Origin: Botryllus schlosseri
Lineage: Eukaryota
Assembly (NCBI GenBank): GCA_051294905.1
Contig: CM119371.1
Location: forward strand, 17,112,001-17,176,000
Length of the DNA stretch: 64,000 nucleotides
Direction: 5' to 3'
Shown here: one piece after another, positions 9,571-36,158 of the stretch
Layout of the letters: every line of letters starts with the position of its first letter
Position numbering within the stretch: position 1 is the stretch's first letter
Notes under the pieces: model-generated
Database searches by the model: none
The model's input: only the letters and a program-made list of their open reading frames with translations
Told to the model about the DNA's origin: nothing
Translations under genes and position numbers: made by a program

Positions 9571-9647
9571 TGTGCTCGCATTTCAATTTAACACAATGCT
9601 TTGATTCCTGCTTGAATGATGGCAGGCAGACTCGTAATTAATCTTCC

Positions 9648-14500: not shown

Positions 14501-14769
14501 ACTTTTTGACATAGCAGACCGGCCTCGAAATTTCATTACGTAACGAAGTCATTATACCCACGGGTCCACCCGATAGTGTTCAATAATTATTAACGGGCCC
14601 TACATTTTCCAAGACACCTCACTGGCTCACTCAGCTTTACCGGCAAATATGAATACATGAGCAGAGAGAGGATAAATAATTGACAGTAATATATACGCAA
14701 TTCCTGATCATATTGACCGATTCAATCATGAATGATAAAAAATTTCCGAATGTAATCACCCCATGTCTG
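11513..14769 (+). mobile_element. 3.26-kb non-autonomous hAT element (CAGACATGGG termini, TAATCG/CGATTA subterminal repeats) with nested insertions
   Basis: CAGACATGGGG at 11513 and CCCCATGTCTG ending at 14769. Perfect 8-bp TSD GTTGATAA on both sides. Related ends at about 1832-1935 and 15880-16050. Confidence 0.85.
12415..12971 (+). mobile_element. Nested hAT MITE (AGGGTTGTAA termini, GACTCGAGTC repeats)
   Basis: TAGGGTTGTAA...TTACAACCCTG with perfect 8-bp TSD GGTATTGG. Partial relatives at about 4515-4670 and 42145-42350. Confidence 0.85.
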
Positions 14770-16347
14770 GTTGATAACATGATGCATACATAGCGGGTGT
14801 TCTTACAATCACTGTACTACATGTACATGTACAATCTATTTACTATGTGCGGATAATTCGTTACGCAATGAAGAACTAATATTTGTGACGCAATAATTAG
14901 CCAAGGCGTTTGACAACCCGTCATATCTGCTATCCAAAACCTGTTTAAATTGCCCTCATCATTGCTCACGCATGTTCATGTTCAGTTTATGTCATGGGTA
15001 TTGTACTGCTGTATGTTTGGCTCCACTAACCTATGTGATCATTAGTTCTCAAAAATAAAAATGAGCATCAAGACGAGCATATGATATCATATATAACTGA
15101 CGTGAGTGGATTCACACTTCAACTGCTGTGTACGTCTGTTATAGATGGTAATTATCTCAAGTTTCGAAAAATATCATATGGGTCTCACTGTAATACATTT
15201 AAAAAGATGAAACTAGCAAAAGATCTATGTAACTCAAGTTTCGCATGTTCAAATAAGGCAACCAACATAAGAAGTAGAAATTTTTACATAGAAAATGTGA
15301 CGCTAACTACGAATGCCATGTAGTGAGTTCGAATTAGTGCTGTGATGACGTCATTAACTTTCTATAGTGACGTCACAGTTGATTAACATGTATGGCTCTT
15401 AGTTCCGTAAAATGGAACATATTGGGTTAATATGCTTCTTGGGACGAAAAAGGTTCCTGATCCCTGCCTTAATGGCATTTTTATCGGTAACCAATATCCG
15501 ATAATAAAGAATCATCGTTACCAGAAACCATCATGCCTAACTGAATTCAAGTATCATTACTTGGTTGCATGGCACATAGCCTACGTAACCCAGCTACAGT
15601 TTGCGAAGATGTAAGCTCATAATCTCAATCTAGCAAAGGTGTTCCACATGTTAGTAAACCACTGTGGTAGCGACAGTTAAGCCAGAATAGGGAGAATATA
15701 TTTTGGCGATATAGGATTTATCTATGTTATATAATCTCCTGTCTTGCTGCCACTGTGATGCAGCGAGTGACGGGAAGTGCAAGTTCAAGTGATCGTGATC
15801 GTGATCCAAAATTTCTGATATTGCAGAAAACGAAGTGCCATCGCAGTCGTTATTTTGCCTTGTAATATTTACGCTGAAGATCAAAGGTAGTAAAATTATG
15901 TAATCGTAAATAATCATGATTACATGTGATAGTAATCCAATAATCCATTATAGCGATCTTTTGCTGTGGTCGCGATCATAATCATACTCACGCGATTAAA
16001 AACTATTCGTAATAGATATCGATTTGACGCAGGTATCACCCCATGTCTACCTGCTGACAGTACTGTTACCAAAACTCGGCCTCCAAATATTGTCACAGAA
16101 CTCTAATAAATGTGATTCATATACAGCGATAGAACAAAATATAATAAAAATCCTAATTTGACTTCACTGCACTAATAGCAACTCACATGAAAAAAAAAAA
16201 CAATCACCCTCAATTGCTAATTCGGGATTGTTTTCCGTGAAATATATAGCATTACGGATTGAGTTCTTTGTCAGGTAGTACGTCTCAGGCTAAATAGTCG
16301 ATACTGTATTGTGGGCATGGATCATTGAAAAAAATCTTTCTGCTCAG

Positions 16348-17754
16348 GAAAATATTTCGCCAGATTTATGGACAAAATCAGACGATTCTCGTGGAATAAT
16401 GTGCAGGGTAAAGTCCTACAATCGTATGAAGATTTATCCGAACCAGATTCTGAGTTTTATCCGCAACTGAAAACTGGATTCAAATTATACCACGGTGCAT
16501 ATTTGCCACAAGAAGGATTCAGTGCGCATTGCAACCCTAAAACTGGCAGCTTCATGGATTACAAAGCCTGTCTAGCATGCATCCAAGAAAAACACGTGGG
16601 CCCGTGCGCTATTATTGGACAACCGGGAAGTGGCAAGACCATCATGATGAAAAGATTAGCAAAGCAATTGATCATTGCAAATAACCTACAGAGTGACGAA
16701 CCCTCTAGATGGAAGAAACTTCGTCAAGTTTTCCGCAATGAAGCTAGACAATATGATGTCGTACTGCACATGAATATCCGAGATATTCCTAATCAGGATA
16801 ACGTTACTTTAGCTAATGTTATATTCAGTCCTCGCGTAACCAAGTTGTCAGCCCATGAGCTTGGATATGGCCTCAAGGCAATACTCGATGGAGAAGTAAA
16901 AATTATAATGTTTTTCGATGGATTGGATCAAGCTACATGGGACCCAATATGCGACACAAGAATAGAGTCGTGGGAAATTTCAAGCACACCTACGATATTC
17001 GGTAACATACTGGCAGGAAATCTTTTACCAAATGTTCCTATTATCATATCATCCAGGGAACACTCCGTAGCACGCTTGTCTAGAGAGATGCGTCCCGAGT
17101 TCATAGCTGCTTTAGTGGGATTTAGTGAAGATGAAGCAGAGAAAATGTATTGCGAATTGATGGGTCTAAATGCAAAAAAAGATTGGCATGAAATGAAGAT
17201 ATCCAATCCTGCAATGCACTATATGTGTCTGACACCATTGTTCCTGGTATTTTATATGATCACGAGAAAACGGTCCCCATCGCACCCCCCTAACTGCGCT
17301 TCCGGTGTGATGGTCACGATAATACAAATTTTCCTGGAATGCGAGAATACGAGAAACTTAGATGACAACGTCGACGTACATGAGGTCATCAGCAAGTTGA
17401 AAGCAATGGCATTCAATGGTACCATGAACCAAAAGGTAACATTCACTAAGGATGACCTATCTGAATACGACCTCGAATATAAAGTGATCAGTGACATTAT
17501 CATCAAAGTTCCGGGTCAGACGTTTCTCGGCCAGAAAATACTTGCTGGGATGTATGAATACTTCTTCTGTCATCAAACCCTTCAAGAAGTGTTAGCAGCA
17601 CTTTTCGTCGTGGGAATGAGACTTGATGAATTCAAGCAAATTGTGGATCACGAATTCCAAAAACCTTACTGGGCCATTGTTCGCAATTTCACCAGTGGTA
17701 TTCTGAAAAATGAGAGCGTGAAAGCTAACATTGGTTTTCAAATTCTAAAGCAAG
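16348..17754 (+). CDS. NLR-like gene, NACHT (P-loop NTPase) exon
   Basis: ORF 16368-17759 has Walker A GQPGSGKT, Walker B IIMFFDGLD, sensor IIISSRE, GFS motif LVGFSEDEA, PLF motif CLTPLFL and winged-helix FCHQTLQEVLAA. Acceptor ctgctcag at 16347 and phase-1 donor G|gttagt at 17755. Confidence 0.92.
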
Positions 17755-18202
17755 GTTAGTATTTTATTCGAGTCAAGATGTATGCTACGCAATTGAATTC
17801 ATGAAACCAATATTTGCAGTCATGAAAAGCATAGTCCAACGCTGATTACGCCAGGGCCGATCGATACAACCTAATGTAATTTACGTATGCAAATTCACTA
17901 AGCTCATTGTCCAATGTGCATTCAAACAAAAGTCGTACAGCTTACATTTAGCGCTGGGCACAAAGATTAAAGTATACTCAAGTCCGAATCGAGTTTTAAT
18001 TTTATTGATTAGAGCCGATTAGTGAGAGATGATTTTTTATAACACCCCATACGCTCCGTGTCACTAAAAGAGATAAACGAAAATGATAGTTTCGCTACCA
18101 TTGTTCACTATAAAAGCCTGTGAATCAGCGGTTCTCAACATTTTTGGACATGAGCCCCCCACATGCACTTATCGTCATGTAAAAAAAAAACATCATCTAA
18201 TA

Positions 18203-19290: not shown

Positions 19291-19783
19291 TGCTCTAAAT
19301 CTTCGGACAATATCAAATAAATTGCTGAAATGAATTTGAAATCAGCGTATACTCTGTTCAGCGCGACTACTGGAGTTAGAGTTTTGCAAGGTTTCTTGAA
19401 TACGAAATAAGTTTAATCTTCACCAATCGTCTTTTTAGAATGGTTGTGAAACACATGTTAAGTCACAATTTATACAAACACTGTTCAATTTTTCGCCCCC
19501 CCCCCTGAGAGCCTCCCGCGCCCCTGCTGTAAACCCAGATTCATCACATCCTAGCATATGAAACATGTTGTACAATGCTATGCACGTCAGTGTAGATAAA
19601 AGAAATCTCTGAAATCGTAATCAACCCACAGTATACAAAGTGCAATGAAATAGGTATGGTCGAAACAATAACTCCGAATTTGCGCATTTGACCTGTAACA
19701 AACTCAAACAGACGTAATTGATTCGCGCTAACTGAAATATGAACCTCATTCCCTTTCCCTATATGTTTTCCATATTTGAACAG

Positions 19784-20091
19784 ATGATTTGCCACTTAAA
19801 GCGGAATATCTGATGAATAATTTGAAGTTTCAACTGGAACATGATATTACTCCAGCACAGAAACTGGACATTTATACATCTTTGCAAGAAGCATCGGCGT
19901 TCGAAATACTAGAAAGCTACGCACAAGAACTTGACTTCTCGAATTATCCACTGACCCCAGCTGTACTTAATATGTTGTGTTGGGTGATTGGAAATCTCGG
20001 GAGAGTGAAATCATTATCATTCAACAATTGTAACATTGATGACCATTTGCTGAGTGTTCTAGCCGCTGAGACGAAGAGACAGTCTATCAAG
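19784..20091 (+). CDS. NLR-like gene exon 2 (post-NACHT helical domain and first LRR-like turns)
   Basis: Phase-1 acceptor cag|AT matches the donor at 17755. Encodes DDLPLKAEYL...LDFSNYPLTPAVLNMLCWVIGNLGRVKSLSFNNCNIDDHLLSVLAAETKRQSIK. Phase-0 donor gtaaat. Confidence 0.88.
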
Positions 20092-20505
20092 GTAAATTGC
20101 TTATTTAGACGTCCGTAACTGTACGAAATTCATCCCCGATGTTCCATGTATAAATAATCATATTATATTACATCCTGATTTTTAAAATTCTTTCTTGAAT
20201 ATTACTCACCGGTATGCAGACTTTCAGAATAGCCGCAATTACTTATAAATTGAATATAGGCGTTCAATAGAATAGATACTATTTTCCTTTATAGAACAGA
20301 TGAGATAACCAAGCACTGAGTTATAGATATATCTATTGTTAAATCCATGGTACATGGATAAGCACTGAATCATATGTGCGGAAGGACTTTAGTATTTATG
20401 TAGACAGAATTGACTATTATCCAAAAAGATGGGAAGTCTTCCAATCTTCACAAAAAGTCATGTTCCAACCAACATGAGATATTATTATTATCTTTTTTTT
20501 CCAAG

Positions 20506-20825
20506 ATCGACAGATTTGATATGAGAAACAATACAAGCTGGTCAGACATTTGTTGTTGGAAGGAGATTTTCAAAAGTTTAGAAGTTACTACTTTGCTGAT
20601 TGATATACCTGTCAATGGACTAGTAAGGAAAAATATCATGACTTCGAGTGCTTAATACGCTACAGTGTACAACTATTTTTTTAGAAATGTGAAGACATGG
20701 TTTTGCAAATTTTAAAAGCCACGGAAGAGAATGTTTCTCGAATTGAAATTGGTAATCTGAAAAATATTCAACTGGACATTAGAGAAGTTGAAGAAATATC
20801 AACTCTTGATCTGAGTTCGACAAAG
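20506..20825 (+). CDS. NLR-like gene repeat module 0 (exons 20506-20622 and 20685-20825)
   Basis: IDRFDMRNNTSWSDICCWKEIFKSLEVTTLLIDIPVNGL | KCEDMVLQILKATEENVSRIEIGNLKNIQLDIREVEEISTLDLSSTK. Both exons are phase 0-0 with AG/GT ends and a 62-nt intron. Confidence 0.75.
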
Positions 20826-21306
20826 GTATGTACTGACTACATGTACATTGTACAATCTACAGAATAGAAGTAGGCAGTAACGAAGTACCTCTACTTTTTG
20901 AAGTACTCGAAGTAGATTTTGCCTACTCACACTACTTTTCAGACTATTTCTAATTCTACTCGACAGTTTTCAGTTTTGTAGACAAAAATAAGCGTAGAAT
21001 ACCGACTTACTTACTTGTGAACCACCACTCCTATTCTACTTGAGTAGGAATTCCGGCGTTACTTCTACTTTTACTTGTGTAGTGTCGGTTACTACGTTGA
21101 CCACCTCGGTGTATGCAAAGAACAGATATCCCAACAGCTTACAATATACGAAAGCCGGTTGAGAGTAATAAAAATTCGCACCCAACAGAATATCAGCGGG
21201 AAGGCATTTCGTTACAGTCTATAGCGGAAGGACCCTAATGATATCGTTATTGATCCCCACATCTTGTCCAACCAATGTGTTGACTAAACTCTTCATATTT
21301 CGTTAG

Positions 21307-21646
21307 ATTGAACTATTGAAGATAAGCTCTGATGAAGTATCATTCGACAAAGAACTTTGGCGAAAAATTTTCCAACGGATATCATTGGGCGTCGATCATT
21401 GTTCTGTCCAACTACCCAGAGTTGAAAAGGTGAAGTTAGTATGAATTTGGAATAATGCTTTTTAAACTAGGTATTTTCGTTGTACAGACGGACATATTTC
21501 ATCTCAAATCGTGGGTTGAGGTAGCTGAATCTGCGAACATCGATACCGTTAAAGCGGTATCTATGCATTCGGATCAACCTGTGTCATTTCGAATGAACGA
21601 AATCGAAGAAATTGAAAGATTAATCGGGTTGAATTTTTGTGGAACG
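21307..21646 (+). CDS. NLR-like gene repeat module 1 (exons 21307-21429 and 21488-21646)
   Basis: IELLKISSDEVSFDKELWRKIFQRISLGVDHCSVQLPRVEK | TDIFHLKSWVEVAESANIDTVKAVSM...LIGLNFCGT. Phase 0-0, 58-nt intron. Confidence 0.85.
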
Positions 21647-22531
21647 GTAACTTAGCAGTCACGATATCTTCTTACCTAAAGTGGAAGGTGGTATAGTAGG
21701 CTAGTGGAGTGAGGTAGTGTGCCTTTCGATGAGTTTTCCATGTCTATATTAGGGATGGTGTGAACGTGTGGTTCGCGTTTGCGTTTTGTTGTGAACCTCA
21801 TAAATTAAACTTCACGTTCACAAACGAACCTTGCAGTGTGAACCTTTTTCATATATTACAATTTTTCAGCTCATTATAACATCTTTGGTTGAAATTCTTT
21901 GCATTTTAAATTGGGAACACTCTGTGCATGGCGCTGGCAGCATAAAAATCACCACTAAACATTGCACTCACCTTGCAAATCTCCAATATATACATATATA
22001 TAGGGTGATGGCGCGCCTACGGCTAATTTAGCACATAGTAGAATGCCATAAACAGTAAGTTTTCTTTGGTAAATCCCACAATCACAGAGAGAACCTGAAT
22101 CTCGTGAAAATAATCCGTTTATACCATCAATATATAGAAAAATATTATTATATTTGCTGTACGATGCGATGACTCCGTTACTGTACTAAACATACTGCAG
22201 GGTTCTTATAGGTATAGTTCCTGGGAGTAGAAGTATAGCTAACCAAAGTACTATAGGTTTAGCTGGCTGACTACTTAACCTGGAATCCTGTATCCTGGTT
22301 AGGTCTTCTCAAGACGCAGATATACGCAAGATATACGAATATATTTCAGACGTTGTTACAAGTAGCAATATGAGTCTACTGATACGAGAGAATCAGTAGT
22401 TTTATACTAGAGGCAAATTATTCTAGAACAGGATGTCTCTCGATTACGAGATATACACATTTCATGGTTGGACGATAACAGGGATCTGTTACAATACATC
22501 TTCAACAATCAGCTATTTTGAATCTGTTCAG

Positions 22532-22865
22532 ATTTGGGAATTATGGATATACCTAAACAAAGAATCATTTGATGAAAACATCTGGAGGCAAGTGTTTCAA
22601 AGAATATGCTTCTCTGTAGAGCATTGCTATGTTAAAGTACCAGAAGTTAAAAAGGTGGCATGAATATATATCAGAGATAATAAAATACGCGATACATTAC
22701 ATTGCCCCATTCCAGGTAGCAGAAATAGAGGTGGAAACATATGTAGCTGCGGCAAATTCCGTGAATGTCGGAACAGTACATCAAGTTTATTTGGATTTCG
22801 ATGATGGAACTATCTTTGGAATTGGAGATTTTCTGAAATTGAATGAATTAGACTTCTCTGGAAAT
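22532..22865 (+). CDS. NLR-like gene repeat module 2 (exons 22532-22654 and 22716-22865)
   Basis: IWELWIYLNKESFDENIWRQVFQRICFSVEHCYVKVPEVKK | VAEIEVETYVAAANSVNVGTVHQVYL...LNELDFSGN. Phase 0-0, 61-nt intron. Confidence 0.85.
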
Positions 22866-23449
22866 GTAAATTATCATTTCATTATCATTATTAGGAGTAA
22901 GATTCTGCAATCCGAGCGTTGGTGCTTCTTTTTACAATTTTCAACGCACCCGAGGCGTTGTCATAAACAGGCTGCAAGCAGTAACCTTTACTGTTCTTTG
23001 AAACAAACATCCTTCGCTGCCACATAATTATACCATATTGGTCGTCGGAATTGTATTAGAATCGAACAATTTCAAATATTTCAGTGGCCTTTATTTTAGA
23101 TCCCAATCGAACCTCATTGTATGTAGTGAGACATAGTGTAATGGTGTACGTATCACAGCTGCAACACCAGTGGGTTGAGAGTTGTGAAATATGAGGAGGA
23201 TCCATCTGATGTAGAATGAGTAATTCAGTCGAAACACCGTTTATAACAAAGCAACGATAGTAATCATTACTTCAGATCTGTCAAATCTTATCTATTGCAT
23301 AATTATAAGGGATTCCATCTTAGGTTATTCCAATTTACAGCATTCACACATGTAAGCTCATATCATATATCAATCCATATATCGCTATATATAGTATATA
23401 TAGATACTTGATACAATATGTCATCAGTTATGATTTTGAATATCATTAG

Positions 23450-23777
23450 ATCAGCAAATTGTGGATAAGGCCGGATAAGGAATCGGTACGCAACAGTTTG
23501 TGGAAAGGGGCATTTAAACGGATGTGGTTTACGGTGGAATCTTGCTACGTGCGAGTACCACGGGCGGTAAAAGTGAAATTGATTCCACTAATATATGTGA
23601 AACATAACTTCTTTCGTGCTTCAGATGGAAGGAGTCGTCGATGTGGCAACATGGGTCTCTGTTGCAGAAAACGCTGGTCCTTACGTGGTAAAAGAGGTTA
23701 TCTTAGAGGCAGATGAGATGACTGCATTACGCATTCAAGATATTTTGAATTTGTTGGCATGGAATTTCTCTGGCAAG
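23450..23777 (+). CDS. NLR-like gene repeat module 3 (exons 23450-23572 and 23625-23777)
   Basis: ISKLWIRPDKESVRNSLWKGAFKRMWFTVESCYVRVPRAVK | MEGVVDVATWVSVAENAGPYVVKEVIL...LLAWNFSGK. Phase 0-0, 52-nt intron. Confidence 0.85.
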
Positions 23778-24069
23778 GTGATTATTGAAATTAGATTACT
23801 TCCAAACTAGGATTATATGAATTATATGACGTGTCAATAGCATGGTCGTCTGTTAGAAGTAGGGCAGGTAATATTGTAAACTTAACAATGAATTACTGTT
23901 TCCCTCTCTGTGGAGTTTCCACAGAGGATCATTGCGGAGCGATTCACACAATGGTACGAGGCGCTTCTTCGATATAAACCCTAGAGTGGAACAGTATTGC
24001 AAATGACAACAATAAATGTTTCCTATGAACACGTCAAAATGTATAAACGTCAAAATAATTTTTATTTTA

Positions 24070-24530
24070 GCGTTTCGGGTTAGACTTGATATATTAGGGT
24101 TCCATTGTGGTTATGGTTGTGGAGGACATAATTAGTGTTCGAGGTGGGGGATATCAGACTTAGAAGAGGGGGTATTTGGGCCGAAGGTGGGTTGCGGTTG
24201 AGAGGTTGGGATAAGGGTATCCCAAGATTAGAGTTCGGGGTGACCGACATTAGGGTTTAGTTAGAGTATCGCATCCAGCCCTCAAACTCTATTCTTACGA
24301 TACCCACAACCCTAATCCTGGGGTATCCCAACCCAAACTTGGCCCTAATCGGCCTTCAACCTCAATAATATCGCTAACATCGCTCCCAACGTCGCTAACT
24401 CCCAGCCCAACCCTAATGTTCCTCACTCCCAACCCCAATATCTGTCATCCTGAACCCTACTCTATGTTACCCCAAACCCTAATATCTCCAACCACAGCTC
24501 GAATGTGCCTATCCCCAACCCAAAACACAA
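24070..24530. repeat. Degenerate G-rich/C-rich foldback with TTAGGG-like words
   Basis: The first half is rich in TTAGGG/GGGTT words and the second half in AACCCT/CCCAA words, with the skew switching at about 24270. Confidence 0.6.
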
Positions 24531-25545
24531 TAAATATGGACGTTCATAAATTTTTGTGTGGTGTTCATGGAAAACATTTATTGGTATCATGGAGAATACT
24601 TATTTGACCAGGGGCGTATTGAAGAAGCGCCTGATTTGATTTGGAGTTACGCAATATGAGATTTCTTTCCCTCCCATCCCCATATCTCGACATTAGACAG
24701 GCAAACGCATTGTTCTCCATGGGTTTGGGTCTTGAGTGACGTTAGGAAATATCGATGTTCTAAATTACTGGCCGGAAACATCTCGTATACAGCCTCCGAA
24801 AATTTGCGAATGTCAAGATATCACGAACTGGCGTGGCAATTACATTTAATTTAGTCTTAGGGAAACCCACCAGCCGATTATTATCTGACGCCGACAGCAG
24901 CATTGGTTATGGGGCTTGTCTTTCTCAAAGTATTAGTCGAGACAGGTATAAATGAGAATCGCTACAGACCTATCGTTTAATGTACGTAATTTGTTGCAAA
25001 AAAATGATAGGTACTAACAGTTGGGTTACCATATTTTTGAAATCTGAAGAGTACACTTTTTCTAAATTTTCAGACTTGCAATACCAGAGAAGAATTCTGA
25101 AAAAAATAGTAAATTTTCGGCACTTTGTGGTCGGTTGACTAGAAAACGGTCAACTTTCTAGCCCAGCTCCGAAAATACAGTCTTTTCCCATTATCACTTG
25201 GTTGAGTAAACTAAAGGTCGACATTGCGACTTAGCTTCCTGAATAGCCGTCGGAGCGTTATGTCCGGGCTGATTGATTGTATCTCAGTCAAATTTTGCCC
25301 TATATATAACAAAAATTCACAACAAAAGAGGACAACATCTCAAAAAAGAGGATATCTGGGTGACCTCCGTGGACTCTTTCAGAAAAGTAAAAAAAGTGGA
25401 CAAATCCTCCTAAAAGATGCGAGAACATAAGTAGCCCCATAACCCACTTAGCCACGGTGCTTGCAGGAAATCGACATAAATTGATTTTGCAAAGGAATAG
25501 AGCTTGATTCATCCAGGCATTAATGATGTTTTTGATTTTATTTAG

Positions 25546-25882
25546 ATCAACAAATTATGGATAAGACCAGATAACGAATCAGGACATGGAAAGACGTGGA
25601 GGCAGGCTTTTGAACGGATGTCTTTTACCGTAAACTGCTGTTACGTACTGGTACCAAAAGCAGCAAAAGTGATACGACATAAAATTTGAGGTAATATCGC
25701 ATATGTGAGGCAATACTTCTTTTGCGTTGCAGATGGAAGGAATCGATGTGGATACGTGGATATCTGTTGCACAGTCTGCGGATTCTTACGCCGCAAACGA
25801 AGTTTTTTTAGAGTCGACTGAGTCGTGCTCACTTCGGATTGAAGATGTTCAAAGATTAACTGCATCGAATTTCTCGGGCAAG
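25546..25882 (+). CDS. NLR-like gene repeat module 4 (exons 25546-25668 and 25733-25882)
   Basis: INKLWIRPDNESGHGKTWRQAFERMSFTVNCCYVLVPKAAK | MEGIDVDTWISVAQSADSYAANEVFL...LTASNFSGK. Phase 0-0, 64-nt intron. Confidence 0.85.
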
Positions 25883-26626
25883 GTGAATAATACATACCCA
25901 AGAAGCATTCGTTTTATGCAGGATGTACATTGCACATTTATACAATAGCTCATCACTCTGGCTTCTGGTCATATATGTGAGAGGTGCAAAATTAATCCTA
26001 TCGGAAGTCAATATAAATTGCCTGAAGTTATGAAAATCAACATCAACAATTCCCACATACGGAGCTATACATCGCGCTCTATTCGGCGTAGAATACACTC
26101 GTTTTCATGTTCATATGAATTGACAGCGACTTGTCATAAGTGTCAGGCATTTTTGCCTGCAAGACAACTTGCCTAAGGATTTTTTCGAAATACGATCTGT
26201 GATAATTACTTATACTTTCTGATAAAAGAAATCTTGTTTCTAGGCCTTTGTAGTGCCTCTCATACGAATATAAAATCAGTAAAGATACCAAGATCAATTT
26301 CGGTGGATAACACTGACTTATACACTGATATATGGGCATATCGCAATCACCTCGTGGCTTAAGTCTTCATCGTAAAGGCTAAATATAGCTACAAAATAAC
26401 TCGTAGATTAACTGTATATTGAAGTTATGTACCTCCAAGAAGCTCTTTTAACTGAAAAGAATATCACAAATTTTAACCGGAAATTATTACAAAATAGAGT
26501 ATTTGGCTGAACAATTGAAATGCAAACCGTTTTAGCGAACATCCATGATTGTAAATTCTGTCACATATACTGCAGACAGAGAAACTAGATGGGTTGAGCA
26601 TATCCCCTGTTTCGTTAGTGTACGTA

Positions 26627-27238
26627 CATTAGGGCTCTTCAAAAATGACTTTTTTTCTCAAATCGCACTGGCTACTTGATAAAATTGTTAGGTTACCTAA
26701 TTCAAGCCTACACACCAAATTTAGTTCAATTCTAACCAGTAGCCGCATTGCTACAGGAGAAGAAAGTTTCTATATATTATATAAAAATAAATATCAAAAA
26801 ATTGGAAAATTTTCTGGTCACCTCCTGAAAGTGTTAGGTTGTCTATAGAAACGATGTTCACCAAATTTGGTTAAATTCCAACCAGTAGAAGCAGAGTTAT
26901 TGCCGTCGAAAAATTTCGATTATGAATAAAATAGTATTTACGGTAACCAATTCTTTAATTATTTATTATAGTGGTGCTCACCGTAAATACTATTTTATTC
27001 AAATCCAAATTTTTCAACCGCAATAACTCCGCTGTCATGGGGTGAACGGAAAATTTTCAAATTTTTCGGTATTTATTTGTAGCCTATATAATAAATCGAA
27101 ACATTTCTTCTGTAGCAATGCGGCTACTGGATGGAATTGAACCAAATTGGATGTGTAGGCTCGAATTAGGTAACCTAACAATTTTATCAAGTAGCCAGTG
27201 TGATTGGAGAAAAAAGTCATTTTTGAAGAGCCCTAACG
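26627..27238 (+). mobile_element. Long-TIR MITE with TA target duplication (Tc1/mariner-like)
   Basis: CATTAGGGCTCTTCAAAAAT...ATTTTTGAAGAGCCCTAACG, with about 250-bp imperfect inverted arms, flanked by TA. Confidence 0.8.
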
Positions 27239-27522
27239 TACATACATTAAAGATATGTTAATATACATACATTAATGAATGCACTGAAAAATGATGTCAA
27301 AACCATAACCACAACACGCCAAGATCCGGTGAGGGGTACCGACACTCCTCCTCGATTTAGCATTGAAATATCAACGGACCGGTAGTACGCATTACGCTCA
27401 GAGCACTAATAACTTGACAAGTATCACGCTGTTCACTGCCGCCTGACATTTCAGGCCACGGAAAACTGTAAGCATATACATTAAGTTCTATTATAGAAGC
27501 CTAACGCAAACAGCAGTTAGTC

Positions 27523-28545
27523 TAGGGTTGCCATACGTCCGGAATTTCCCGGACATGTCCGGAATTTCACTGTTCAAACTGGCGTCCGGGAGGAATTTCT
27601 AAAATATGCCAAATGTCCGGAATTTTGAAGACTTTTCGTAGGCTCATAATTTTTTCGTAAATCAGCATAAAAACAATATTTTTTGGAAATATTTATGCTG
27701 ATGCATGATATTTTTCTTCGCGCTGCGCGCGAATAACTATCAAATCTAGTGATTTTAATATGGAGACTACCACCCTCGCCAAATCTGCAATAAAATATCA
27801 ATAAAAACAACCTTCATTTACTGGAATAAGCCTAATTGCAATCGTAATTATAGGAGAACGGTATATTCCTAGACATCGTTAAAACCGTTTGAATGCTTTA
27901 TTCAAAGATAGTGGTTCCAAACGGGGGGTCGTCGGCCTTTATTCTGGGGTTTGCGAATATGTGGAATGTAATCAGCTTCCAAAATAGCCCGTGAGTAAGT
28001 CTGGGCAAAGGTGCTGACTTCTTTTAGTAATTAGCTCGTCAAATTTTGATCTCGGCCACGGAATATTTTCAAATTGGAGACGAAGTCGCGACCATAAAAG
28101 GTTTTTTCGAACTGTATCTTCGAACTCATCATCCTCCACCAGCGCTAACGCTAACTGTAATCTTGTGGGCGGAGAGCAGTAGCTGTATAGTAATATATGG
28201 AACGACCAATATTATTGACAGAATTCATTAAAATAATTTTACGACCAGATGCATATATAAACCGGATTCATATAGCAAGCACCCCCCCCCCCCCCAGAAG
28301 TTGCATCGATTACCCTATAGTGTGGGCTCAAAATCATTGTATATTTGGACGGGAGGAGGCTGTAAACATGTGCTTTCGGTCCCGGTTACACATCGCACAG
28401 CCACATACTCCTGAACCGGATCGTGACCAGCACCTCTGGTCTCTGAGCAAAGCTTTGCTAGTGTGACGTCATGACTCATTTTGAAATCCACTAGTAGGCG
28501 CTAAAGAGTGTCCAGAATTTGAGTTTCTGAAATATGGTAACCCTA
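27523..28545 (+). mobile_element. Non-autonomous hAT element (TAGGGTT(G/A)CCATA termini)
   Basis: TAGGGTTGCCATA...TATGGTAACCCTA, perfect 8-bp TSD AGTTAGTC, GTCCGGAATT subterminal repeats. The empty site is present in the inverted sister copy near 39640. Related remnants at about 25020-25420 and 47230-47595. Confidence 0.9.
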
Positions 28546-29310
28546 AGTTAGTCTGACTGAAATGTTACCCGAAACACCATTTGACTATCAATACACATCT
28601 AAGCAAGTATGTTGAGAATGTCATTAATAGCCCGAAATATCTCTTGCTGAACTTATCTTAACGAAGTACTTCACTCATATTGCCTTCCAACGCTACAATT
28701 CGCCGGTATAAACGGAATATAATTCAAACCAAGTGTGCAGCGGTAAACAACATCCGATGACTTATGACATCACAATCATTACACGCTCAAGTGCTCACGT
28801 ACTTTGCAGACGAATGTCACGGTGGAGCCGCGTGATAATCCAGCGCAATTTGATTGGTTAATAACGCTGACACCAATCTCTCTAGCCGAGAACAATCGAT
28901 GTTCTTAATTCGAGAGTGATCAGTTTTTGTACACCAAAGGTACCGCCTCGCTGTAGTGTCAAAACGGTTGCGTACACTTCTCTCCTGGACCTTCTTCGCT
29001 TGTTTCGGCATTGAATGTACACATTTTTGTTGACTGGGTGGAGAACAGAATAGGTATTCAGTGGTATGCAGCGTTGCGACCAAATATATTATTAATTGTA
29101 TTCTTCATGCAACGTATGCATTGTCCATGTACCTCATACATAACACGGTTTCGCATTGGTGTTCTCGCCTCTGTGATTAATGACATTGGCATGTTCCTAA
29201 TGGTACCTAGATTGAAACCGCAACATCACTTTCGGATGGCTAAAATGTGGCATATGAGTATTAAATCATCTGACGAGCCGGATGCGGCCGGCGTGTTGTA
29301 TGATTGACAC

Positions 29311-29826
29311 TAGGGCTGGGCAAAATCGAGTACCTGAGTGATTCGATTCTGAATCACGTATTTCGCTTCGAGTCGAGTCGAGTATTCGAGTATCGCTCAT
29401 TATGACGTCACAACAGAATGCACTGTGTCAACGTTCAAATATGTACCTTTTATGCCACCACAAGGAACATAATGCCTGTTTTCGGTCACATTAAAGATAA
29501 TTTTGTATTTTTTTCGACCATACAGACTTCATTCCATTTCTTGGCAATGTTGTAGGATGATGGTGACTTCGGAAATGTGTTATTTCCAGTAACGTTCGTA
29601 GCTTTGTACTATGTCTCGTATGTTGCGACACAGCCAATCAAGGTTTCAAGCCTTCCTGGGTGGAAAATAGTACCAAAACTATAATTATCGTTAGTAAATT
29701 AACTTTGAGTTGCGAGGAGCGTATAATTTCAATACTCGAAAAAATCATCTTTTACTACTCGACTCGAATCATTAAAATTAATACTCGATTCAGATTCGAG
29801 TACTCGAATCATTGTGCCCAGCCCTA
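29311..29826 (+). mobile_element. hAT MITE (TAGGGCTGGGCA termini, TCGAGTAC repeats)
   Basis: TAGGGCTGGGCA...TGCCCAGCCCTA with perfect 8-bp TSD ATTGACAC. Confidence 0.9.
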
Positions 29827-30731
29827 ATTGACACCCCTGCTCTAACTACTCCACTCGAATGATAACAATCAATTCTTATCTCGAATTTGAGTGCACGAAT
29901 CGTTATGCCTAGCCCTCACAGTTCCAGGTAAGAGTGACATTGTTAAACCCAGTTACTTCTTCGATTTACAAAATTATCGCGAACCCTCCTCAATTGGTGC
30001 ACATGGCGGACTGAATTTACGTTAGATTGGAATGTTTACGTGGGGATGGTGTTAACGTGATATTCACGTTCGTGTTCTGTGTGTGAGCCTCAGAAATGAT
30101 TTTGTGTGCGCAGAAACCGTGTCAGCACTGCGCATTTGCGTACGTGCGCAGCATAGAGGTAACATTGCATAATAACGTTGTATTGTTCGAGAAGGCCGTA
30201 GGGAGGTGGGTCATGAGAGGCTCAGAACCAATATTAGAGAAGGACCGGCAGGCAATAGCATTACATGAATGAGTAGCAAAGCAATGGCATCTCCAGTGAA
30301 AATGAAGTTACCGGATATTTGATATGGTTTATTGGCAAAAATGACTTCATGGTATGATCGCAGCCAAATAAAAATGTCACAAAAACGATAACTATTATAT
30401 TTAGAAAGAAAATTGTTTATAACACTTAAGCCATTCTCTTTCACAAAAAAATGCACCTGGTTCGGTACTGTGAATAAGGAAGAAGTAATAGTTGAGCAAA
30501 CTTCGATAAAAATTGCACGAATTGTAACTACGCCTTGCTCGGTGTGTCGTTTCGGCATTGTGAGAACGATCCACCACATGTCTAAAGCCAATCGACCCCA
30601 TCGATTCCGCTATGTTTCGTCATGTTTTATCAAATAGACAGAGAGTATTTATTTAAGCATATTCTGCACATTCAATAGGCCTATATGCATTGCATAGTAA
30701 TCTAACCGATATACTAATCTTTTATTTTCAG

Positions 30732-31062
30732 ATATCAAATCTATGGATGAAGGTTGATTTCGGATCATTTGACGCCGATTTATGGCGAAATACATTTCGA
30801 AGCTTGAAATTCCCCGTCTCTCATTGTATTGTTGCTCCACACAAAATAGAGGTCATTTGTAATTAAGATTTAGCAAGTGTAGCGCCATTAAATCGTCTGC
30901 TACTCATTTTAGAACGGACGAATAGATGTTAAAAAATGGATCGAAGCAGCACAAATTGCTGAATTGGGAGTTATTGACGAAGTAACGTTGTCTCCGATTA
31001 GTTGGCTCACACTCCGGATTCACGATATCCGATTGTTTAATGAAGGAAAATATTGCAGCAAG
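30732..31062 (+). CDS. NLR-like gene repeat module 5 (exons 30732-30851 and 30913-31062)
   Basis: ISNLWMKVDFGSFDADLWRNTFRSLKFPVSHCIVAPHKIE | NGRIDVKKWIEAAQIAELGVIDEVTL...LFNEGKYCSK. Phase 0-0, 61-nt intron. Confidence 0.82.
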
Positions 31063-34000
31063 GTACGTAGCGTTGAAGGGAGGATGCCTACAATCTCAAT
31101 TATTTTTTTTATTTTTTATTAGTTCTATAATGGCTAACTTTATCATGAAAGCAATCCAGAAAAATTGACAGAGACATTTAAGTCTCTACACCTGAATTGC
31201 TACTTATGGAAATGGTTCCTAAATTATTTCATCTCGTGGACACCTTTGGCGGATTTTTCAGCCAAAATATTCCATAGAAAGAATCACCCCGATGATTACC
31301 AAAGGACAATTTTCCCCGCTCAACAACCTGTTGACTGAAGAATAAGACAGCACATACAGACGATTTTTACAGAAAGGGCCGTAACAATATTTTATCGACC
31401 TCCAAAAAACAATGGGTAAGTCCCAATCAACACAACTTCGGGAGAGCTTCGTTCCGCCGCAGACTCCAATATTTCCATTGATACGTACAATTCACGGTTA
31501 CACAAACAGACGCGCACACACACACCCTTTCCGCAGCGAACCAAGTCACGTGTCACGGTATCCGTAGAGGTATCCAATAGTCATATTATGTAGCAGCGAA
31601 CACAATTATATCTGTCGGCTTACCACGCACCAATCGGTAATATAGCTGCTATGATAATCAGTATGCAACTATGTATTAATTTACTGGTCACGCATTTTTT
31701 TTAAGTCTATGTATGAATTTGGTCAATAATATTGGCACTTTCATGGCATATGTGGTGATCGCTATCGTCTTATTTCGGTTTTGTTATTATTGCCTGATTG
31801 GTTAATTATCTGAACGTTGTCTGCTGTAGGCCTAGGTATAAAACCATTGCGTTTCTTTTCATTGTTTGTCTTTGATAATAAACGCCTTGGATATAAAGAG
31901 GTGTATTCGATTCACAACAGCATGCACGCGATCATATTTCCAGCTGGAGCTGATCGAAATGATTAAATAGTGTCTTCGGAAATTTAGGACAGCCATGCAA
32001 CACAGGTAAAACTTTTACTGAAGTTTCGGGTGGCTCCACACTACTTTGTTACGGCATGTTGTTACTTCGTGACCTCTGGTGAAGATTGTGACTAAAGACT
32101 GCCGCAAAGATTCCAAATTCGTGTATCTTGACGGATTGATTATTTCCATCTTCATATCGCATTTGTTCCGCGGGGCTCAGATCTTAAGGACAGGACTATT
32201 CGTTGCCGTGCAGTCATATCGACATAGACGACTTCGGTAAACATTTGTCGGTCATTTTGGATTTAAGGTGATATCACCGTTGATCTTTCTACTTCGCAGA
32301 GTGGCTGGTTTGCGCGAAACGGTAAAGTGTCGTGATGTGTCCTAGCACAGACATACATGTGTCTAATGGTTCCGCAGTACCCTAAAGCGCAACGTTGGGT
32401 CGCCTCAAGCGATACTCTGAAAATACCGTTCTTTCATAATTGTGAAAACAGTTTGACTCAATTCTGTAAATAAAGCGTAGTTTTGCATTATTTTTTCATT
32501 TCTAGTTTTCTAGTGACACTAAATCGCGCGAAGCGCGCAAAGAAATATCTCAGGTTAATTGAATTTGCCCGAATAATTACAACAGAGTTATAGGCATGGC
32601 CCCTTTCGCCTTCTTGCGAATAAATATGCTATAGCACAGGAATGAGTTCGCCACTATCAGTTTTGGCAACATTTCGTCAAGTTAAGTATGTGTTTTTCTC
32701 GATCGGGTAGCTGTTCGCTAAAAATGAAACGAGTTCGATTGCGATCTTTTTTACTTGAATCGATGACGTTGGAATATTTTGTCACTATCTGCAAAATCTT
32801 GACTTGAAAATAACATGAATACCTTTACTAGAGGCCCCGTTGCGATAGATTCGGCATGACATTTGAACGCTTAACAGAAATTGGATGAGAGGCTTTTGCG
32901 GGTTGAACAAAGTTTGTCTCGCAAACTGCACTTTTAGTACACCTGAACTAGTTTAGGTAGAATTTGTAAGTGAAGAAGAGATTTCGAATTGTATTTGAGC
33001 ATACTTCCATAAAAAAACGCCTAAGTAACATAAGTTCAGAAATAGCAAGTTGACTGTACTTAACAGTTTTCACATGAAATATTTGGTAAATCGTTTACTA
33101 TTCAAAATCAAAATCTCCCGTAAAAATTACAAAATTTTCCCTAAGGGCCAAGGGGCTAATTCCATCCGGTTGGTAACCACTGCACAGTCACAAATATGGT
33201 TGCTACTGCTGCTTTCCAAACCTCTAAATTAGGGCATGAAAGTTCTAAAGGGAATAGCACTCCCCAGTCAACATAAGTGCGTACATTCAATGCCGAAACA
33301 GGCGAAGGAAGTGCAGGAGAGAAGTGAACGCAACCGTTTTGACACTACAGCGATGCGGCACCTTTGATGTACAAAAACTGATCGCTCTCGAATTAAGAAG
33401 ATCGATTGTTCTCCTTTCCATCGGCTGGGCAGAGAGATTGGTGTTAGCGTTATTAACCAATCTAATTGCGCTTGATTATCACGCGGCTTAACCGTGACGT
33501 TTCTTCTGCCTAGCTTTGCCAGGTTCGTCAGCACTTGAACGTGGAGGGGTGCCTTTATTTTGTGCTAGGAAACTTATGAAAATTATGGAAACTTATGAAA
33601 CTTATGAAACTTATGAAAACTTATGAAAACTTATGAAACGTATGAAACTTATGAGATGTAACCGCAAAAATTGAAGCCTATTCTGGGTACACGACCACGT
33701 TGCACTGTCAGCTGTCTACGCTTCGATTGTAAGTCAAGCACGCGTCTTCTTGAATGAAGTACGGTTTTTTGATGATACAAATTCCCAGCGATAAAACAGC
33801 GGACCGAATTACTTATACCAAATTCTTAATACAATCAAATACGACAATTAAATACACATCAAAGCCAAATATAACCCTAACTACAACAATATGGCCGTAA
33901 CTAATACACATCAAATATCACTCCTTTCAGCACAGCGCGCTGTTCCAAATGAATCAAGCACGTGTAGTTCTGAAATACAACAAACCATTCATGCGTCACA

Positions 34001-34340: not shown

Positions 34341-36158
34341 TCAACCATTATCTATTACAAGATATTTCAATTTGTATGATGTTGTTTGACCAGTAGCAAT
34401 TACATGCATTTTCACAGCGCAAAACTTCTGCCGCTTATGTTTTGTCAATTCATGTTTCAAAGACATTGACCATTCCAATTTCTCAAGACCTTCATCAGTT
34501 AGACGAGCTGATGTATTTACTTGTATTGTGAAGTTACGCAGTATGTCTGTTGAGAAGCCAAGTTTAGTATTTACCGAATCAATTATTCCCGAACACATTT
34601 CACAGGCATTGCCTGGCGAGCCAGGAGGTACCGTAAGAGCCATCAAAGAAGGCTGAACACGTTGGCGATAACACACTTTGATTACCGAATTATTGTTATC
34701 AATTATATTATTTTCCGAAGCCAACTCACTGGCTTCCGCATTGATCGATGGTAATAAGGGAAAAACAGTTTGAGATATCATTTCCGATTCACACATAATA
34801 TTAGGTTCACTTTTGCCCACCAAACAAGGGCTATCGAAATCAATCAGATCAGGCATTGTACAAGAATCACTTTGGCCCGATAAACAAGGGCTATCAAAAT
34901 CAATTAGATCAGGCGTAATATTAACAGGATATGTTGTTGGAACCGATTTAGGGATCAAATTTAACAGAACATTGTTTTGAGATTCTACAGACTGGTGCAG
35001 AATTTTATTTTGAGCATTTTCGTTGTTCCTACCAGAGGCCGCAGCCATAATAAGCTTAGAGTCACGAACTTTTCTCTTTGCACGAATTTCCTCAAGTTCA
35101 AATGAGATTTCAAAATGTTCTCTCTGATGAATCACATTCAGTTCATCAATTTCTCTTTGTTTGATTTGTCTCCAGATTTCCACCATGGACTTGCATTCAC
35201 GTTCAAGCTTTTCCTCTTCAATTCTTCCTTTCCGAGCAATTTCTTCTCTTTTTGTTTCTATCTTTTGTATTCTTTCTTCTTCATCACGCTGATGACGCAA
35301 CATCAGCTGTTGTTTCTCCAATGTGTGCCGTTGAGATGTTGTGACAGTTCTGGCTTCGAGAACTGCTTCTTTTCGAATTATTTTCACTCCTCCAGCTGAG
35401 GTAGACTTTGATGATATTGAGCCATAAGATTGACTAACATGACTTTTGGATTGTAAACTGGATCGACTGCCAACCCTCGAGATTGATCTGGTTGCTGTCC
35501 TATGAAAAGTGCCTTTGGTTTGCAATACACTTTCGACGCCCCCTTTCACATTACGCGACGCCATGCTGACAGACACACAACTCGAACTTGGATTTGTATT
35601 GTTTGGGTTGCTCGAGCTGCTTTTGTTAGGTCGTGCCGTAGCTTCCACCGAGGCCATGCTATCAAACACACAACTCGAACTTGGTTCTGTCTTGCTTTGG
35701 TTGTTCGAGCTGCTTTCATTTGATCGTGCTGTAGCTCCCACGGAGGCCGTGCTAACAGACACACAACTCGAACTTGACTTTGTATTGCATTGGTTGTTCG
35801 AGCTGCTTTCGTTTGGTCGTGCCGTAGCTTCCACCAAGGCCATGCTATCAGACACACAACTCGAACTTGGTTTTGTATTGCTTTGGTTGTTCGAGCTGCT
35901 TTCATTTGGTCGTGCTGTAGCTCCCACGGAGGCCATGCTAACAGACACACAACTCGAACTTGGCTTTGTATTGCATTGGTTGTTCGAGCTGCTTTCATTT
36001 GGGCGTGCTGCAGCTTCCGTCGCGACGTGATCGTAGGCTTTGGCGTGTATTGCTTGTTTGTTTGGACTTTCCACAAACCCAGATAACATCAGGGCGTCGA
36101 TCCCACGTTCATTTGGCATTTGTTGATTGGAGCTGGTTGTATTAACGAACGGTTCCAT
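34341..36158 (-). CDS. 605-aa single ORF of the LTR element (gag-like, low complexity)
   Basis: Uninterrupted ORF between the LTRs: five 31-aa repeats, a Ser-rich tract, a charged coiled coil (EEERIQKIETKREE...), and two PDLIDFDSPCL motifs. The Ser-rich plus coiled-coil layout recalls BEL/Pao gag N-termini; no CCHC knuckle seen. Confidence 0.7.
   Translation of the reverse strand: MEPFVNTTSSNQQMPNERGIDALMLSGFVESPNKQAIHAKAYDHVATEAAARPNESSSNNQCNTKPSSSCVSVSMASVGATARPNESSSNNQSNTKPSSSCVSDSMALVEATARPNESSSNNQCNTKSSSSCVSVSTASVGATARSNESSSNNQSKTEPSSSCVFDSMASVEATARPNKSSSSNPNNTNPSSSCVSVSMASRNVKGGVESVLQTKGTFHRTATRSISRVGSRSSLQSKSHVSQSYGSISSKSTSAGGVKIIRKEAVLEARTVTTSQRHTLEKQQLMLRHQRDEEERIQKIETKREEIARKGRIEEEKLERECKSMVEIWRQIKQREIDELNVIHQREHFEISFELEEIRAKRKVRDSKLIMAAASGRNNENAQNKILHQSVESQNNVLLNLIPKSVPTTYPVNITPDLIDFDSPCLSGQSDSCTMPDLIDFDSPCLVGKSEPNIMCESEMISQTVFPLLPSINAEASELASENNIIDNNNSVIKVCYRQRVQPSLMALTVPPGSPGNACEMCSGIIDSVNTKLGFSTDILRNFTIQVNTSARLTDEGLEKLEWSMSLKHELTKHKRQKFCAVKMHVIATGQTTSYKLKYLVIDNG
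35570..36025 (-). repeat. Coding tandem repeat, 5 x 93 bp with alternating A/B variants
   Basis: TCGAGCTGC recurs at 35612, 35705, 35798, 35891 and 35984. The unit is ATARPNESSSNNQ(C/S)NTKPSSSCVS(V/D)SMASV(G/E). Confidence 0.95.

What the first reader, a model, noticed from the sequence alone, without database searches (positions are those of the whole stretch)
20506..31062. NLR sensor region built from six tandem two-exon cassettes encoding an unusual 86-94 aa repeat
Seen: six exon pairs (A 117-123 nt, intron 52-64 nt, B 141-159 nt), every junction phase 0. Consensus A is IxxLxI..D.ESF...WR..F.R..F.V..C.V..P...K; consensus B is ...DV.TW..VA.......V.EV.L......RI.DI..L...NFSGK. This is not the canonical LxxLxLxxN LRR: the Asn ladder is absent and Trp/Cys are conserved instead, although alternating strand-helix patterning suggests a solenoid. 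Inference: this is a lineage-specific repeat domain replacing LRRs. Because every cassette is symmetric, any module can be skipped, duplicated or lost in frame, which would give a combinatorially variable innate-immune receptor. The ORF track shows only fragments of it.
Basis: partly seen in the sequence, partly recalled or inferred. Interest (0 to 1): 0.85.

Follow-up and report, generated by a model that had tools for sequence, protein, structure and literature searches.

The report
Divergent LRR-like exon cassettes in NLR
The six two-exon cassettes are real, intact and conserved in a relative. They are most likely a heavily diverged leucine-rich-repeat sensor arm of an invertebrate NACHT immune-receptor gene, not a new domain. 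No transcript evidence was found for the proposed mix-and-match splicing.

Summary
Observation confirmed. Twelve + strand exons form six A/B pairs (A 117-123 nt, inner intron 52-64 nt, B 141-159 nt). All have AG/GT sites and all are phase 0. They follow a NACHT exon (16368-17754) and a linker exon (19784-20091) in consistent phase.

Cassettes 2-6 are clearly homologous. Cassette 1 is a divergent member. Synonymous sites between cassettes are saturated, yet all 544 codons stay open (chance about 5e-14). A related contig (L001, NACHT 52% identical) has the same NACHT-linker-A/B layout, and its first cassette is closest to cassette 1. So the array is old, ordered and under constraint.

Interpretation partly supported. 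The repeat is lineage-restricted: a profile search of 1.84 billion proteins found one exon fragment, and Pfam and PDB gave nothing.

It reads best as three degenerate RI-class LRRs per cassette:
- IxxLxIxx[N/D] opens every A exon, exactly 29 residues after a canonical LRR in the linker exon.
- The conserved Cys sits at the N/C ladder position.
- Helices predicted on single exons are spaced about 30 residues apart.

The fold is unproven because the spliced protein could not be folded here. No RNA reads fell on any of the ten exons of cassettes 1-5, so combinatorial splicing is untested. Symmetric LRR exons are already known from vertebrate NLRs.

The parts
16368..17754 (+). NACHT exon. It carries the Walker A GQPGSGKT, the NACHT domain, a winged helix and the start of the helical domain. 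The first ATG is at 16368. The donor G|GTTAGT leaves one base of a split codon (phase 1).
   Evidence: Pfam NACHT 2.3e-15 and NOD2_WH 5.8e-5. PDB hits to NLRP3, NOD2, NLRP7, NLRP6 and NLRP1. Four homologues lose similarity at the same ...ILKQG boundary. Donor sequence.
19784..20091 (+). Linker exon H (phase 1 in, phase 0 out). It holds the end of the helical domain plus two RI-class LRRs of 28 and 29 residues. The second (VKSLSFNNC...) starts 29 residues before A1.
   Evidence: Sequence and splice sites. Its best PDB matches are ribonuclease inhibitor and an RI-like LRR protein, but they are weak (E 0.05-1.9). The homologous exon in L001 scores E 1.7e-18.
20506..20622 (+). Cassette 1, exon A (117 nt). 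It opens IDRFDMRNN, a canonical LRR core with Asn.
20685..20825 (+). Cassette 1, exon B (141 nt), the most divergent B exon.
21307..21429 (+). Cassette 2, exon A (123 nt).
21488..21646 (+). Cassette 2, exon B (159 nt, with a 3-residue insertion).
22532..22654 (+). Cassette 3, exon A (123 nt).
22716..22865 (+). Cassette 3, exon B (150 nt).
23450..23572 (+). Cassette 4, exon A (123 nt).
23625..23777 (+). Cassette 4, exon B (153 nt).
25546..25668 (+). Cassette 5, exon A (123 nt).
25733..25882 (+). Cassette 5, exon B (150 nt).
30732..30851 (+). Cassette 6, exon A (120 nt), after a 4849-nt intron.
30913..31062 (+). Cassette 6, exon B (150 nt). It has a good donor, AAG|GTACGT. If that donor is unused, the frame runs 19 more codons to a stop at 31120-31122. 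The 3' end of the gene is unresolved.

Best explanation
The region is the C-terminal sensor/autoinhibitory arm of an intact invertebrate NACHT (NLR-type) gene.

Each A+B cassette of about 91 residues most likely encodes a super-repeat of three degenerate RI-class leucine-rich repeats:
- Unit 1: IxxLxIxx[N/D], then a helix ending W...F.
- Unit 2: FxVxxC, then a loop about 10 residues longer than the RI class predicts (it contains V.VP), then a helix.
- Unit 3: VxxVxL, then a helix, ending NFSGK.

Ladder-to-ladder spacings are about 23, 39 and 30 residues. Two canonical LRRs in the linker exon plus 6 x 3 units would give an alpha/beta solenoid of about 20 turns.

By analogy with solved NLRs, this arm would hold the NACHT ATPase inactive and bind a ligand or partner on its concave face.

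Shown: exon structure, phases, homology among cassettes, constraint, conservation of the layout in a relative, NACHT identity, and absence from protein databases. Inferred: the LRR fold, the register, the function, and that the gene is expressed at all.
For: (1) Gene continuity. The NACHT exon ends in phase 1, and G|AT completes a codon in the linker exon. The linker exon ends in phase 0, as do all cassette exons.

(2) The linker exon's last 57 residues align, weakly, to ribonuclease inhibitor repeats. Its core VKSLSFNNC lies exactly 29 residues before the A1 core IDRFDMRNN. The same 29-residue count holds in L001, by my count on the translation.

(3) The pattern [LIVMFW]xx[LIVMFW]x[LIVMFW]xx[NCD] occurs 13 times in the 646-residue spliced arm, against 4.2 +/- 2.0 in 2000 shuffles; none reached 13. 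It falls at fixed cassette positions: A:1 in 6 of 6, A:22-24, and B:21-22. L001 cassettes give 6 against 1.6 +/- 1.2.

(4) In the nine-cassette alignment the conserved columns are the inward-facing positions (I..L.h..d, F.V..C, h..h.L), while the x positions vary.

(5) AlphaFold2 on single exons put helices at A15-23, B7-16 and B37-45. That is about 33, 30 and 28 residues apart around the cassette. In units 1 and 3 the helix starts 13-15 residues after the strand, as in RI-class units. Confidence was low.

(6) Constraint. dS between cassettes is saturated, with dN/dS roughly 0.24-0.7 (0.24-0.36 in six of the seven C2-C6 pairs where dS could be estimated). All 544 codons and all 24 splice sites are intact.

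(7) L001 keeps NACHT, the linker exon and three A/B cassettes, all phase 0. Its first cassette is most like cassette 1 and shares two of its alignment gaps.

(8) The RI-class consensus allows N or C at the ladder position. NLR LRR exons are frame-neutral with a fixed border inside the repeat (PMC6642158).
Against: - No Pfam LRR model, or any other Pfam model below E 0.03, hits any of the six A/B exons scanned; A1, A5, A6, B1 and B6 were not scanned, and the one weak match was PRC-barrel on B3 (E 0.033, below its cut-off). PDB profile searches gave no credible match.
- Profile-profile comparison of the three proposed units with each other and with the canonical LRRs is not significant (P 0.09-0.56), although the U1-U3, HL2-U2 and HL2-U3 comparisons aligned in the proposed register; the others aligned out of register or over only 2-6 columns.
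- Unit lengths of 23/39/30 are irregular, compared with 28/29 in the RI class.
- A second candidate core, L(D/N)FSG(N/K) at the end of exon B, lies only 9 residues before the A-exon core. The two cannot both be strands, so the register is ambiguous.
- The exon-B model shows a beta hairpin, not a single strand.
- The whole spliced cassette was never folded.
- No RNA read was seen on any exon.
Confidence: 0.6

Rival explanations
1. The cassette of about 91 residues is a distinct, non-LRR alpha/beta repeat. It would be either a string of small globular domains or a new solenoid type, and it took the place of most LRRs in one NLR clade. The LRR-like strings would then be generic strand patterns.
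For: - Pfam, PDB sequence and protein-atlas searches gave no credible match.
- Only one true hit was found in 1.84 billion representatives.
- Sub-unit profile comparisons are not significant.
- The exon-B fragment model has helix-strand-strand-helix.
- Unit lengths are irregular, and Trp is conserved in the helices.
Against: - The cassettes stand in register at 29 residues with a canonical LRR.
- N/D and C occupy ladder positions.
- Helices are spaced about 30 residues apart.
- The first cassette, in the window and in L001, has an outright canonical core with Asn.
- LRR models are known to miss single divergent units. Even the visibly canonical linker exon got no Pfam hit.
Confidence: 0.22
2. 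Whatever the fold, the cassettes are used combinatorially. Skipping whole cassettes or single exons would yield many receptor isoforms from one gene.
For: All 12 exons are phase 0-0, so any skip is frame-neutral. Skipping of LRR exons occurs in human NLRP3 (PMC6642158).
Against: - No joint and no read was seen on any exon in four RNA runs.
- The A|B border falls inside proposed unit 2, so skipping one exon would break a repeat.
- The cassettes are old, each is distinct, and they are position-specific between paralogues. That fits a fixed architecture.
- Symmetry is expected from tandem duplication alone.
Confidence: 0.1
3. The locus is a silent or recently dead NLR paralogue, and the cassettes no longer make protein.
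For: No reads fell on the exons in about 5.6 billion RNA letters sampled from four runs of the same species label. No RNA run was shown to hold the NACHT exon. No N-terminal effector exon was found. The 3' end is unresolved.
Against: Every exon is open and every splice site intact, although dS between cassettes is saturated. The 463-codon NACHT ORF is intact and keeps all columns that are invariant across its homologues. Only 6-13% of each run was read. NLR genes are often expressed at low level or only on induction (general knowledge).
Confidence: 0.12

Closest known systems
RI-class LRR arms of animal NLRs (NLRP3, NOD2, NLRC family) with exon-modular repeats (Hoss et al. 2019, PMC6642158)
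   Same: - The NACHT, helical domain and C-terminal repeat arm come in the same order.
- The core is of the LxxLxLxx(N/C) type, followed by a helix.
- The repeat exons are frame-neutral and the exon border falls at the same point of the repeat every time.
- The first two repeats in the linker exon are ordinary 28/29-residue RI-class units.
   Different: - The module is 91 residues on two exons (about three units of 23/39/30), not 57 residues on one 171-bp exon (28+29).
- The ladder residue is mostly Asp or Cys and is lost in unit 3.
- Trp is conserved in the helices.
- No LRR profile recognises it.
- Alternative splicing was not observed here.
LRR super-motifs, for example the three-unit STT motif of small leucine-rich proteoglycans (from memory: Matsushima and colleagues; not checked here)
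   Same: A higher-order repeat made of several unequal LRR units, duplicated as a block.
   Different: Those proteins are extracellular, have S/T-type units of 21-26 residues, and belong to an unrelated gene family with a different exon structure.
Invertebrate NACHT proteins whose C-terminal repeats are not LRRs (WD40, TPR or ankyrin in cnidarians and others; general knowledge, see PMC3879445 for context)
   Same: A NACHT core with a lineage-specific repeat arm.
   Different: Those arms are recognisable known repeat families. This one matches none and looks derived from LRRs.

Membership tests
Animal NLR (NACHT-LRR STAND ATPase) | NACHT NTPase domain with a Walker A P-loop | tested here: met
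   Pfam NACHT 2.3e-15 (57.3 bits, cut-off 26.7). GQPGSGKT is present. PDB hits to NLRP3 and NOD2.
Animal NLR (NACHT-LRR STAND ATPase) | Winged-helix/helical domains after the NACHT | tested here: met
   NOD2_WH 23.6 bits against a cut-off of 23.1. The NLRP3 alignment runs to residue 415.
Animal NLR (NACHT-LRR STAND ATPase) | C-terminal leucine-rich repeats | tested here: inconclusive
   The linker exon has two visibly RI-class units, but their PDB matches are weak (E 0.05-1.9). The cassettes show motif enrichment and register but no profile hit.
Animal NLR (NACHT-LRR STAND ATPase) | N-terminal effector domain (death-fold, PYD, CARD and the like) | tested here: not met
   Nothing recognisable lies upstream. 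The ORF starts 80 residues before the P-loop, and no RHIM-like core was found in 8000-16400. An undetected upstream exon is possible.
RI-class LRR | Core LxxLxLxx(N/C)xL recurring at a regular period | tested here: inconclusive
   The pattern is enriched (13 against 4.2 +/- 2.0) and sits at fixed cassette positions. The period is 23/39/30, not 28/29, and the ladder residue of unit 3 is not conserved.
RI-class LRR | Recognition by LRR sequence profiles | tested here: not met
   No Pfam LRR family at E up to 1 for the six A/B exons scanned, or for the linker exon. The test has little power on single units.
RI-class LRR | Strand-helix horseshoe solenoid fold | not testable with these tools
   The spliced protein has no reference and could not be submitted. 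Only single exons were folded (pLDDT 67 and 60). The fold search of the fragment gave nothing meaningful.
Exon-modular, alternatively spliced LRR genes | Frame-neutral repeat exons with the border at a fixed repeat position | tested here: met
   All 12 exons are phase 0-0. Every B|A border, and the H|A1 border, lies immediately before position 1 of the core. The same holds in L001.
Exon-modular, alternatively spliced LRR genes | Observed exon skipping in transcripts | tested here: inconclusive
   No reads and no joints were seen on the exons in four RNA runs, with 6-13% of each run read.

The most novel reading that the evidence does not exclude
The 91-residue cassette is a previously undescribed repeat fold. 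It would have displaced the LRR sensor in a lineage-specific NLR clade, and its frame-neutral two-exon modules would be spliced combinatorially to diversify a germline innate receptor.
Probability: 0.07. Interest if true: 0.8.

Novelty: new variant of a known kind. Interest (0 to 1): 0.4.

Why it matters
- If the LRR reading holds, this is an extreme example of how far an NLR sensor arm can drift and still keep its scaffold. The Asn ladder has largely been replaced by Asp and Cys, and a three-unit super-repeat sits on two exons.
- It also shows that domain catalogues undercount LRR-bearing NLRs in non-model animals. No profile saw these cassettes.
- It gives a concrete profile for recounting 'LRR-less' NACHT genes in this genome.
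- If the fold turns out not to be LRR, it would be a new sensor module for STAND ATPases.
- The splicing idea is testable with a single long-read cDNA experiment.

Tried and rejected
- Pfam scan of the NACHT exon, the linker ORF and six A/B exons: NACHT only; PRC-barrel at E 0.033 on B3 was treated as noise.
- Protein-atlas feature search with A4 and B4: scores of 0.75-0.82, at the level of shuffled sequences.
- PDB profile searches with the A and B exon alignments: only chance-level hits.
- Profile search of 1.84 billion representatives with the B exons. One true hit: P0005, a genomic ORF reading from a B exon into its intron. Three spurious repeat proteins also appeared; one is a bacterial LRR protein matched on profile positions 26-50.
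- Word-indexed searches with the B alignment and the linker exon: nothing. With the NACHT exon: four single-exon genomic ORFs.
- Contig look-ups. Three of four contigs gave no DNA. L001 was retrieved.
- Fold search of the 51-residue exon-B model: no match below E 1.8, so not meaningful.
- hhalign of the proposed sub-units: not significant. Even the two canonical LRRs against each other gave only P 0.018, so the test lacks power.
- Search for further cassettes downstream of B6 and on the minus strand: none. This includes the ORF at 42411-42734 that another note proposes as a C-terminal exon.
- Folding the spliced arm was left out. There is no reference for a spliced protein, read-through by reference is barred, and none of the inner introns in the window is a multiple of 3.
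- Organism identity was not established.
Full report
**What is there.**

The window is AT-rich eukaryotic DNA with no gaps. On the + strand a 463-codon ORF (16368-17759) is a NACHT exon. It matches Pfam NACHT at 2.3e-15 and NOD2_WH at 5.8e-5, and it carries the Walker A motif GQPGSGKT. Its best relatives with solved structures are NLRP3, NOD2, NLRP7, NLRP6 and NLRP1.

The exon ends at a good donor, G|GTTAGT at 17754|17755, which leaves one base of a split codon. The next exon starts after an AG at 19782-19783 with AT, which completes GAT. It runs to 20091, AAG|GTAAAT, and ends in phase 0.

This linker exon carries the end of the helical domain and two plainly RI-class leucine-rich repeats of 28 and 29 residues. 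Its only PDB matches are ribonuclease inhibitor and an RI-like LRR protein, and they are weak (E 0.05-1.9).

**The cassettes.**

- A exons are 117-123 nt, inner introns 52-64 nt, and B exons 141-159 nt.
- Every acceptor is a pyrimidine tract plus AG, every donor is GT, every length is divisible by three, and there are no stops.
- Profiles of the A and B exons find six copies each and nothing else on either strand of the 64 kb.
- Leave-one-out profiles recover cassettes 2-6 with E from 3e-6 to 3e-16.
- Cassette 1 is not recovered exon by exon. It aligns end to end with a whole-cassette profile of the others (E 5e-5 for that one comparison).

The accurate description is five clear copies plus a divergent first one with the same exon architecture.

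**Are these real coding exons?**

Identity between cassettes is 16-58% at the protein level. Synonymous differences are saturated (pS 0.56-0.82). dN/dS is roughly 0.24-0.36 for six of the seven C2-C6 pairs where dS could be estimated (0.58 for the seventh), and higher (0.41-0.70) for pairs involving cassette 1. These ratios are rough because dS is saturated.

Despite that age, all 544 codons are open and all 24 splice sites are intact. In the neighbouring introns only 10% of 123-nt frames and 6% of 150-nt frames are stop-free. Twelve open exons by chance would therefore occur at about 5e-14.

Independent support comes from a relative. One of four database ORFs homologous to the NACHT exon (43-54% identity) lies on a retrievable 5.8-kb genomic contig, L001. 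Downstream of its NACHT it has:
- the linker exon (E 1.7e-18);
- three A/B pairs, A' 117-126 nt and B' 141-144 nt, all phase 0 with AG/GT sites.

Its first cassette is closest to the window's cassette 1 (31% against 12% for its other two) and shares two of cassette 1's alignment gaps. The array therefore predates the split of these two genes, and the cassettes have positional identity. All four NACHT homologues lose similarity at the same exon end.

**What is the repeat?**

Sequence databases say nothing.
- Among the six A/B exons scanned against Pfam, the only match was PRC-barrel on B3 (E 0.033, below its cut-off), treated as noise.
- No credible PDB match for the exon profiles.
- Protein-atlas scores at the level of shuffled sequences.
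- In 1.84 billion representative proteins, one true hit: P0005, a genomic ORF that reads from a B exon into its intron.

No annotated protein anywhere carries this repeat, so it is lineage-restricted.

- Every A exon opens with IxxLxIxx[N/D]: N in cassettes 1 and 3 and in the first L001 cassette, D elsewhere.
- The conserved Cys sits in FxVxxC, which is the N/C ladder position of the published RI-class consensus LxxLxLxx(N/C)xL... (PMC6642158).
- Exon B contains VxxVxL.
- The strict pattern occurs 13 times in the 646-residue spliced arm, against 4.2 +/- 2.0 in shuffles (0 of 2000 reached 13). It always falls at the same cassette positions.
- The canonical core in the linker exon lies exactly 29 residues before the A1 core.
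- In the nine-cassette alignment the conserved columns are the scaffold positions and the x positions vary.
- AlphaFold2 could only be run on single exons, and confidence was low (pLDDT 60-67). It placed helices at A15-23, B7-16 and B37-45. That is one helix about every 30 residues. In units 1 and 3 the helix begins 13-15 residues after the proposed strand, as in RI-class repeats.

My reading is a super-repeat of three degenerate LRRs per cassette, with ladder spacings of 23, 39 and 30. Unit 2 carries a loop insertion of about 10 residues and is split by the inner intron.

**Weak points of that reading.**
- The fold was never tested on a whole cassette. There is no reference for a spliced protein, read-through by reference is barred, and both folding jobs went to single exons.
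- Sub-unit profile comparisons are not significant (P 0.09-0.56). The U1-U3, HL2-U2 and HL2-U3 comparisons align in the proposed register; the rest align out of register or over only a few columns. The control of two canonical LRRs against each other reached only P 0.018.
- The B-exon tail L(D/N)FSG(N/K) itself looks like an LRR core (P 0.01 against the first canonical unit). It lies 9 residues before the A-exon core, so one of the two is not a strand and the register is not settled.
- The exon-B fragment model shows a hairpin, which may be an artefact of folding a fragment.
- The fold search of that model was meaningless.

I put the LRR-derived solenoid at about 0.6 and a distinct non-LRR repeat at about 0.2.

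**Combinatorial use.**

All exons are symmetric, so skipping is frame-neutral. Symmetry follows from tandem duplication and is a known property of NLR LRR exons, some of which are alternatively spliced in humans (PMC6642158).

I laid four bulk RNA runs carrying the same species label on 20400-26000. DNA runs of that label hold 75-82% of the NACHT exon's sampled words. The result:
- no read on any of the ten exons covered;
- no splice joint;
- only partial reads of 90-95% identity on intronic repeats.

Only 6-13% of each run was read, so low or inducible expression is not excluded. By my rough estimate, expression in these samples is below a few tenths of a transcript per million.

Two points argue for a fixed architecture. 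The A|B border falls inside proposed unit 2, so only whole-cassette skips would keep a solenoid intact. The cassettes are also old and keep their positional identity between paralogues. Nothing here speaks to haplotype copy number.

**Gene ends.**
- No effector-domain exon was found upstream. The first ATG lies 80 residues before the P-loop.
- After B6 there is a good donor, but no further cassette-like exon lies downstream. Without splicing the frame stops at 31120-31122.
- The ORF at 42411-42734, proposed as a C-terminal exon in another first-reader note on this window, has a loosely similar hydrophobic pattern but no profile support.

**Verdict.**

It overreaches in two places. The repeat is most likely a strongly diverged LRR rather than a replacement for LRRs, and the combinatorial-receptor idea has no support so far.

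I class it as a new variant of a known kind, of moderate interest. The decisive steps are a structure model of the spliced arm and long-read cDNA.

Noticed in passing
window 23993-24600: A foldback (MITE-like) element of about 608 nt lies in the B4-A5 intron. Its 47-nt terminal inverted repeats are 77% complementary. RNA reads from all four runs show 'opposite strands' joints at 24036/24561, so copies of it are transcribed somewhere in the genome.
   Followed up: partly
window 20875-21100, 21750-22500, 24900-25450: Repeats in the introns between cassettes attract partial RNA reads of 90-95% identity with loose ends at fixed points. They look like dispersed repeats expressed from other loci, not transcription of this gene.
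   Followed up: no
window 34341-36158 (- strand): An intact 605-codon ORF on the opposite strand, 3.3 kb downstream of B6. It has five 93-nt tandem repeats (35556-36018) encoding a Ser/Asn-rich unit, followed by a charged, coiled-coil-like stretch. It has no obvious link to the NLR gene. It would sit inside an intron if the NLR gene continued to 42 kb.
   Followed up: no
window 42411-42734 (+): This ORF has a hydrophobic and FS.EDW pattern loosely like an A exon. The nine-cassette HMM does not detect it (E > 20). Its status as a 3' exon of the NLR gene is open.
   Followed up: partly
L001 1856-5473 (Logan SRR23343704 contig): A compact relative of the gene. The NACHT-to-linker intron is only a few bases to tens of bases long. 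The A-to-B introns are 228, 61 and 207 nt. The contig ends 294 nt after the third cassette, so the total number of cassettes is unknown.
   Followed up: partly
P0001, P0004, P0005 (Logan SRR25569784): Two of the three NACHT-exon homologues whose contigs were looked up, and the only B-exon hit, come from one sequencing sample whose contigs could not be fetched (P0003's contig was not looked up). That sample probably holds several paralogues of this family.
   Followed up: no
window 57989-60424 (- strand): An intact 811-codon ORF with an N-terminal C2H2-like zinc finger. It looks like a transposase and is the subject of another first-reader note.
   Followed up: no
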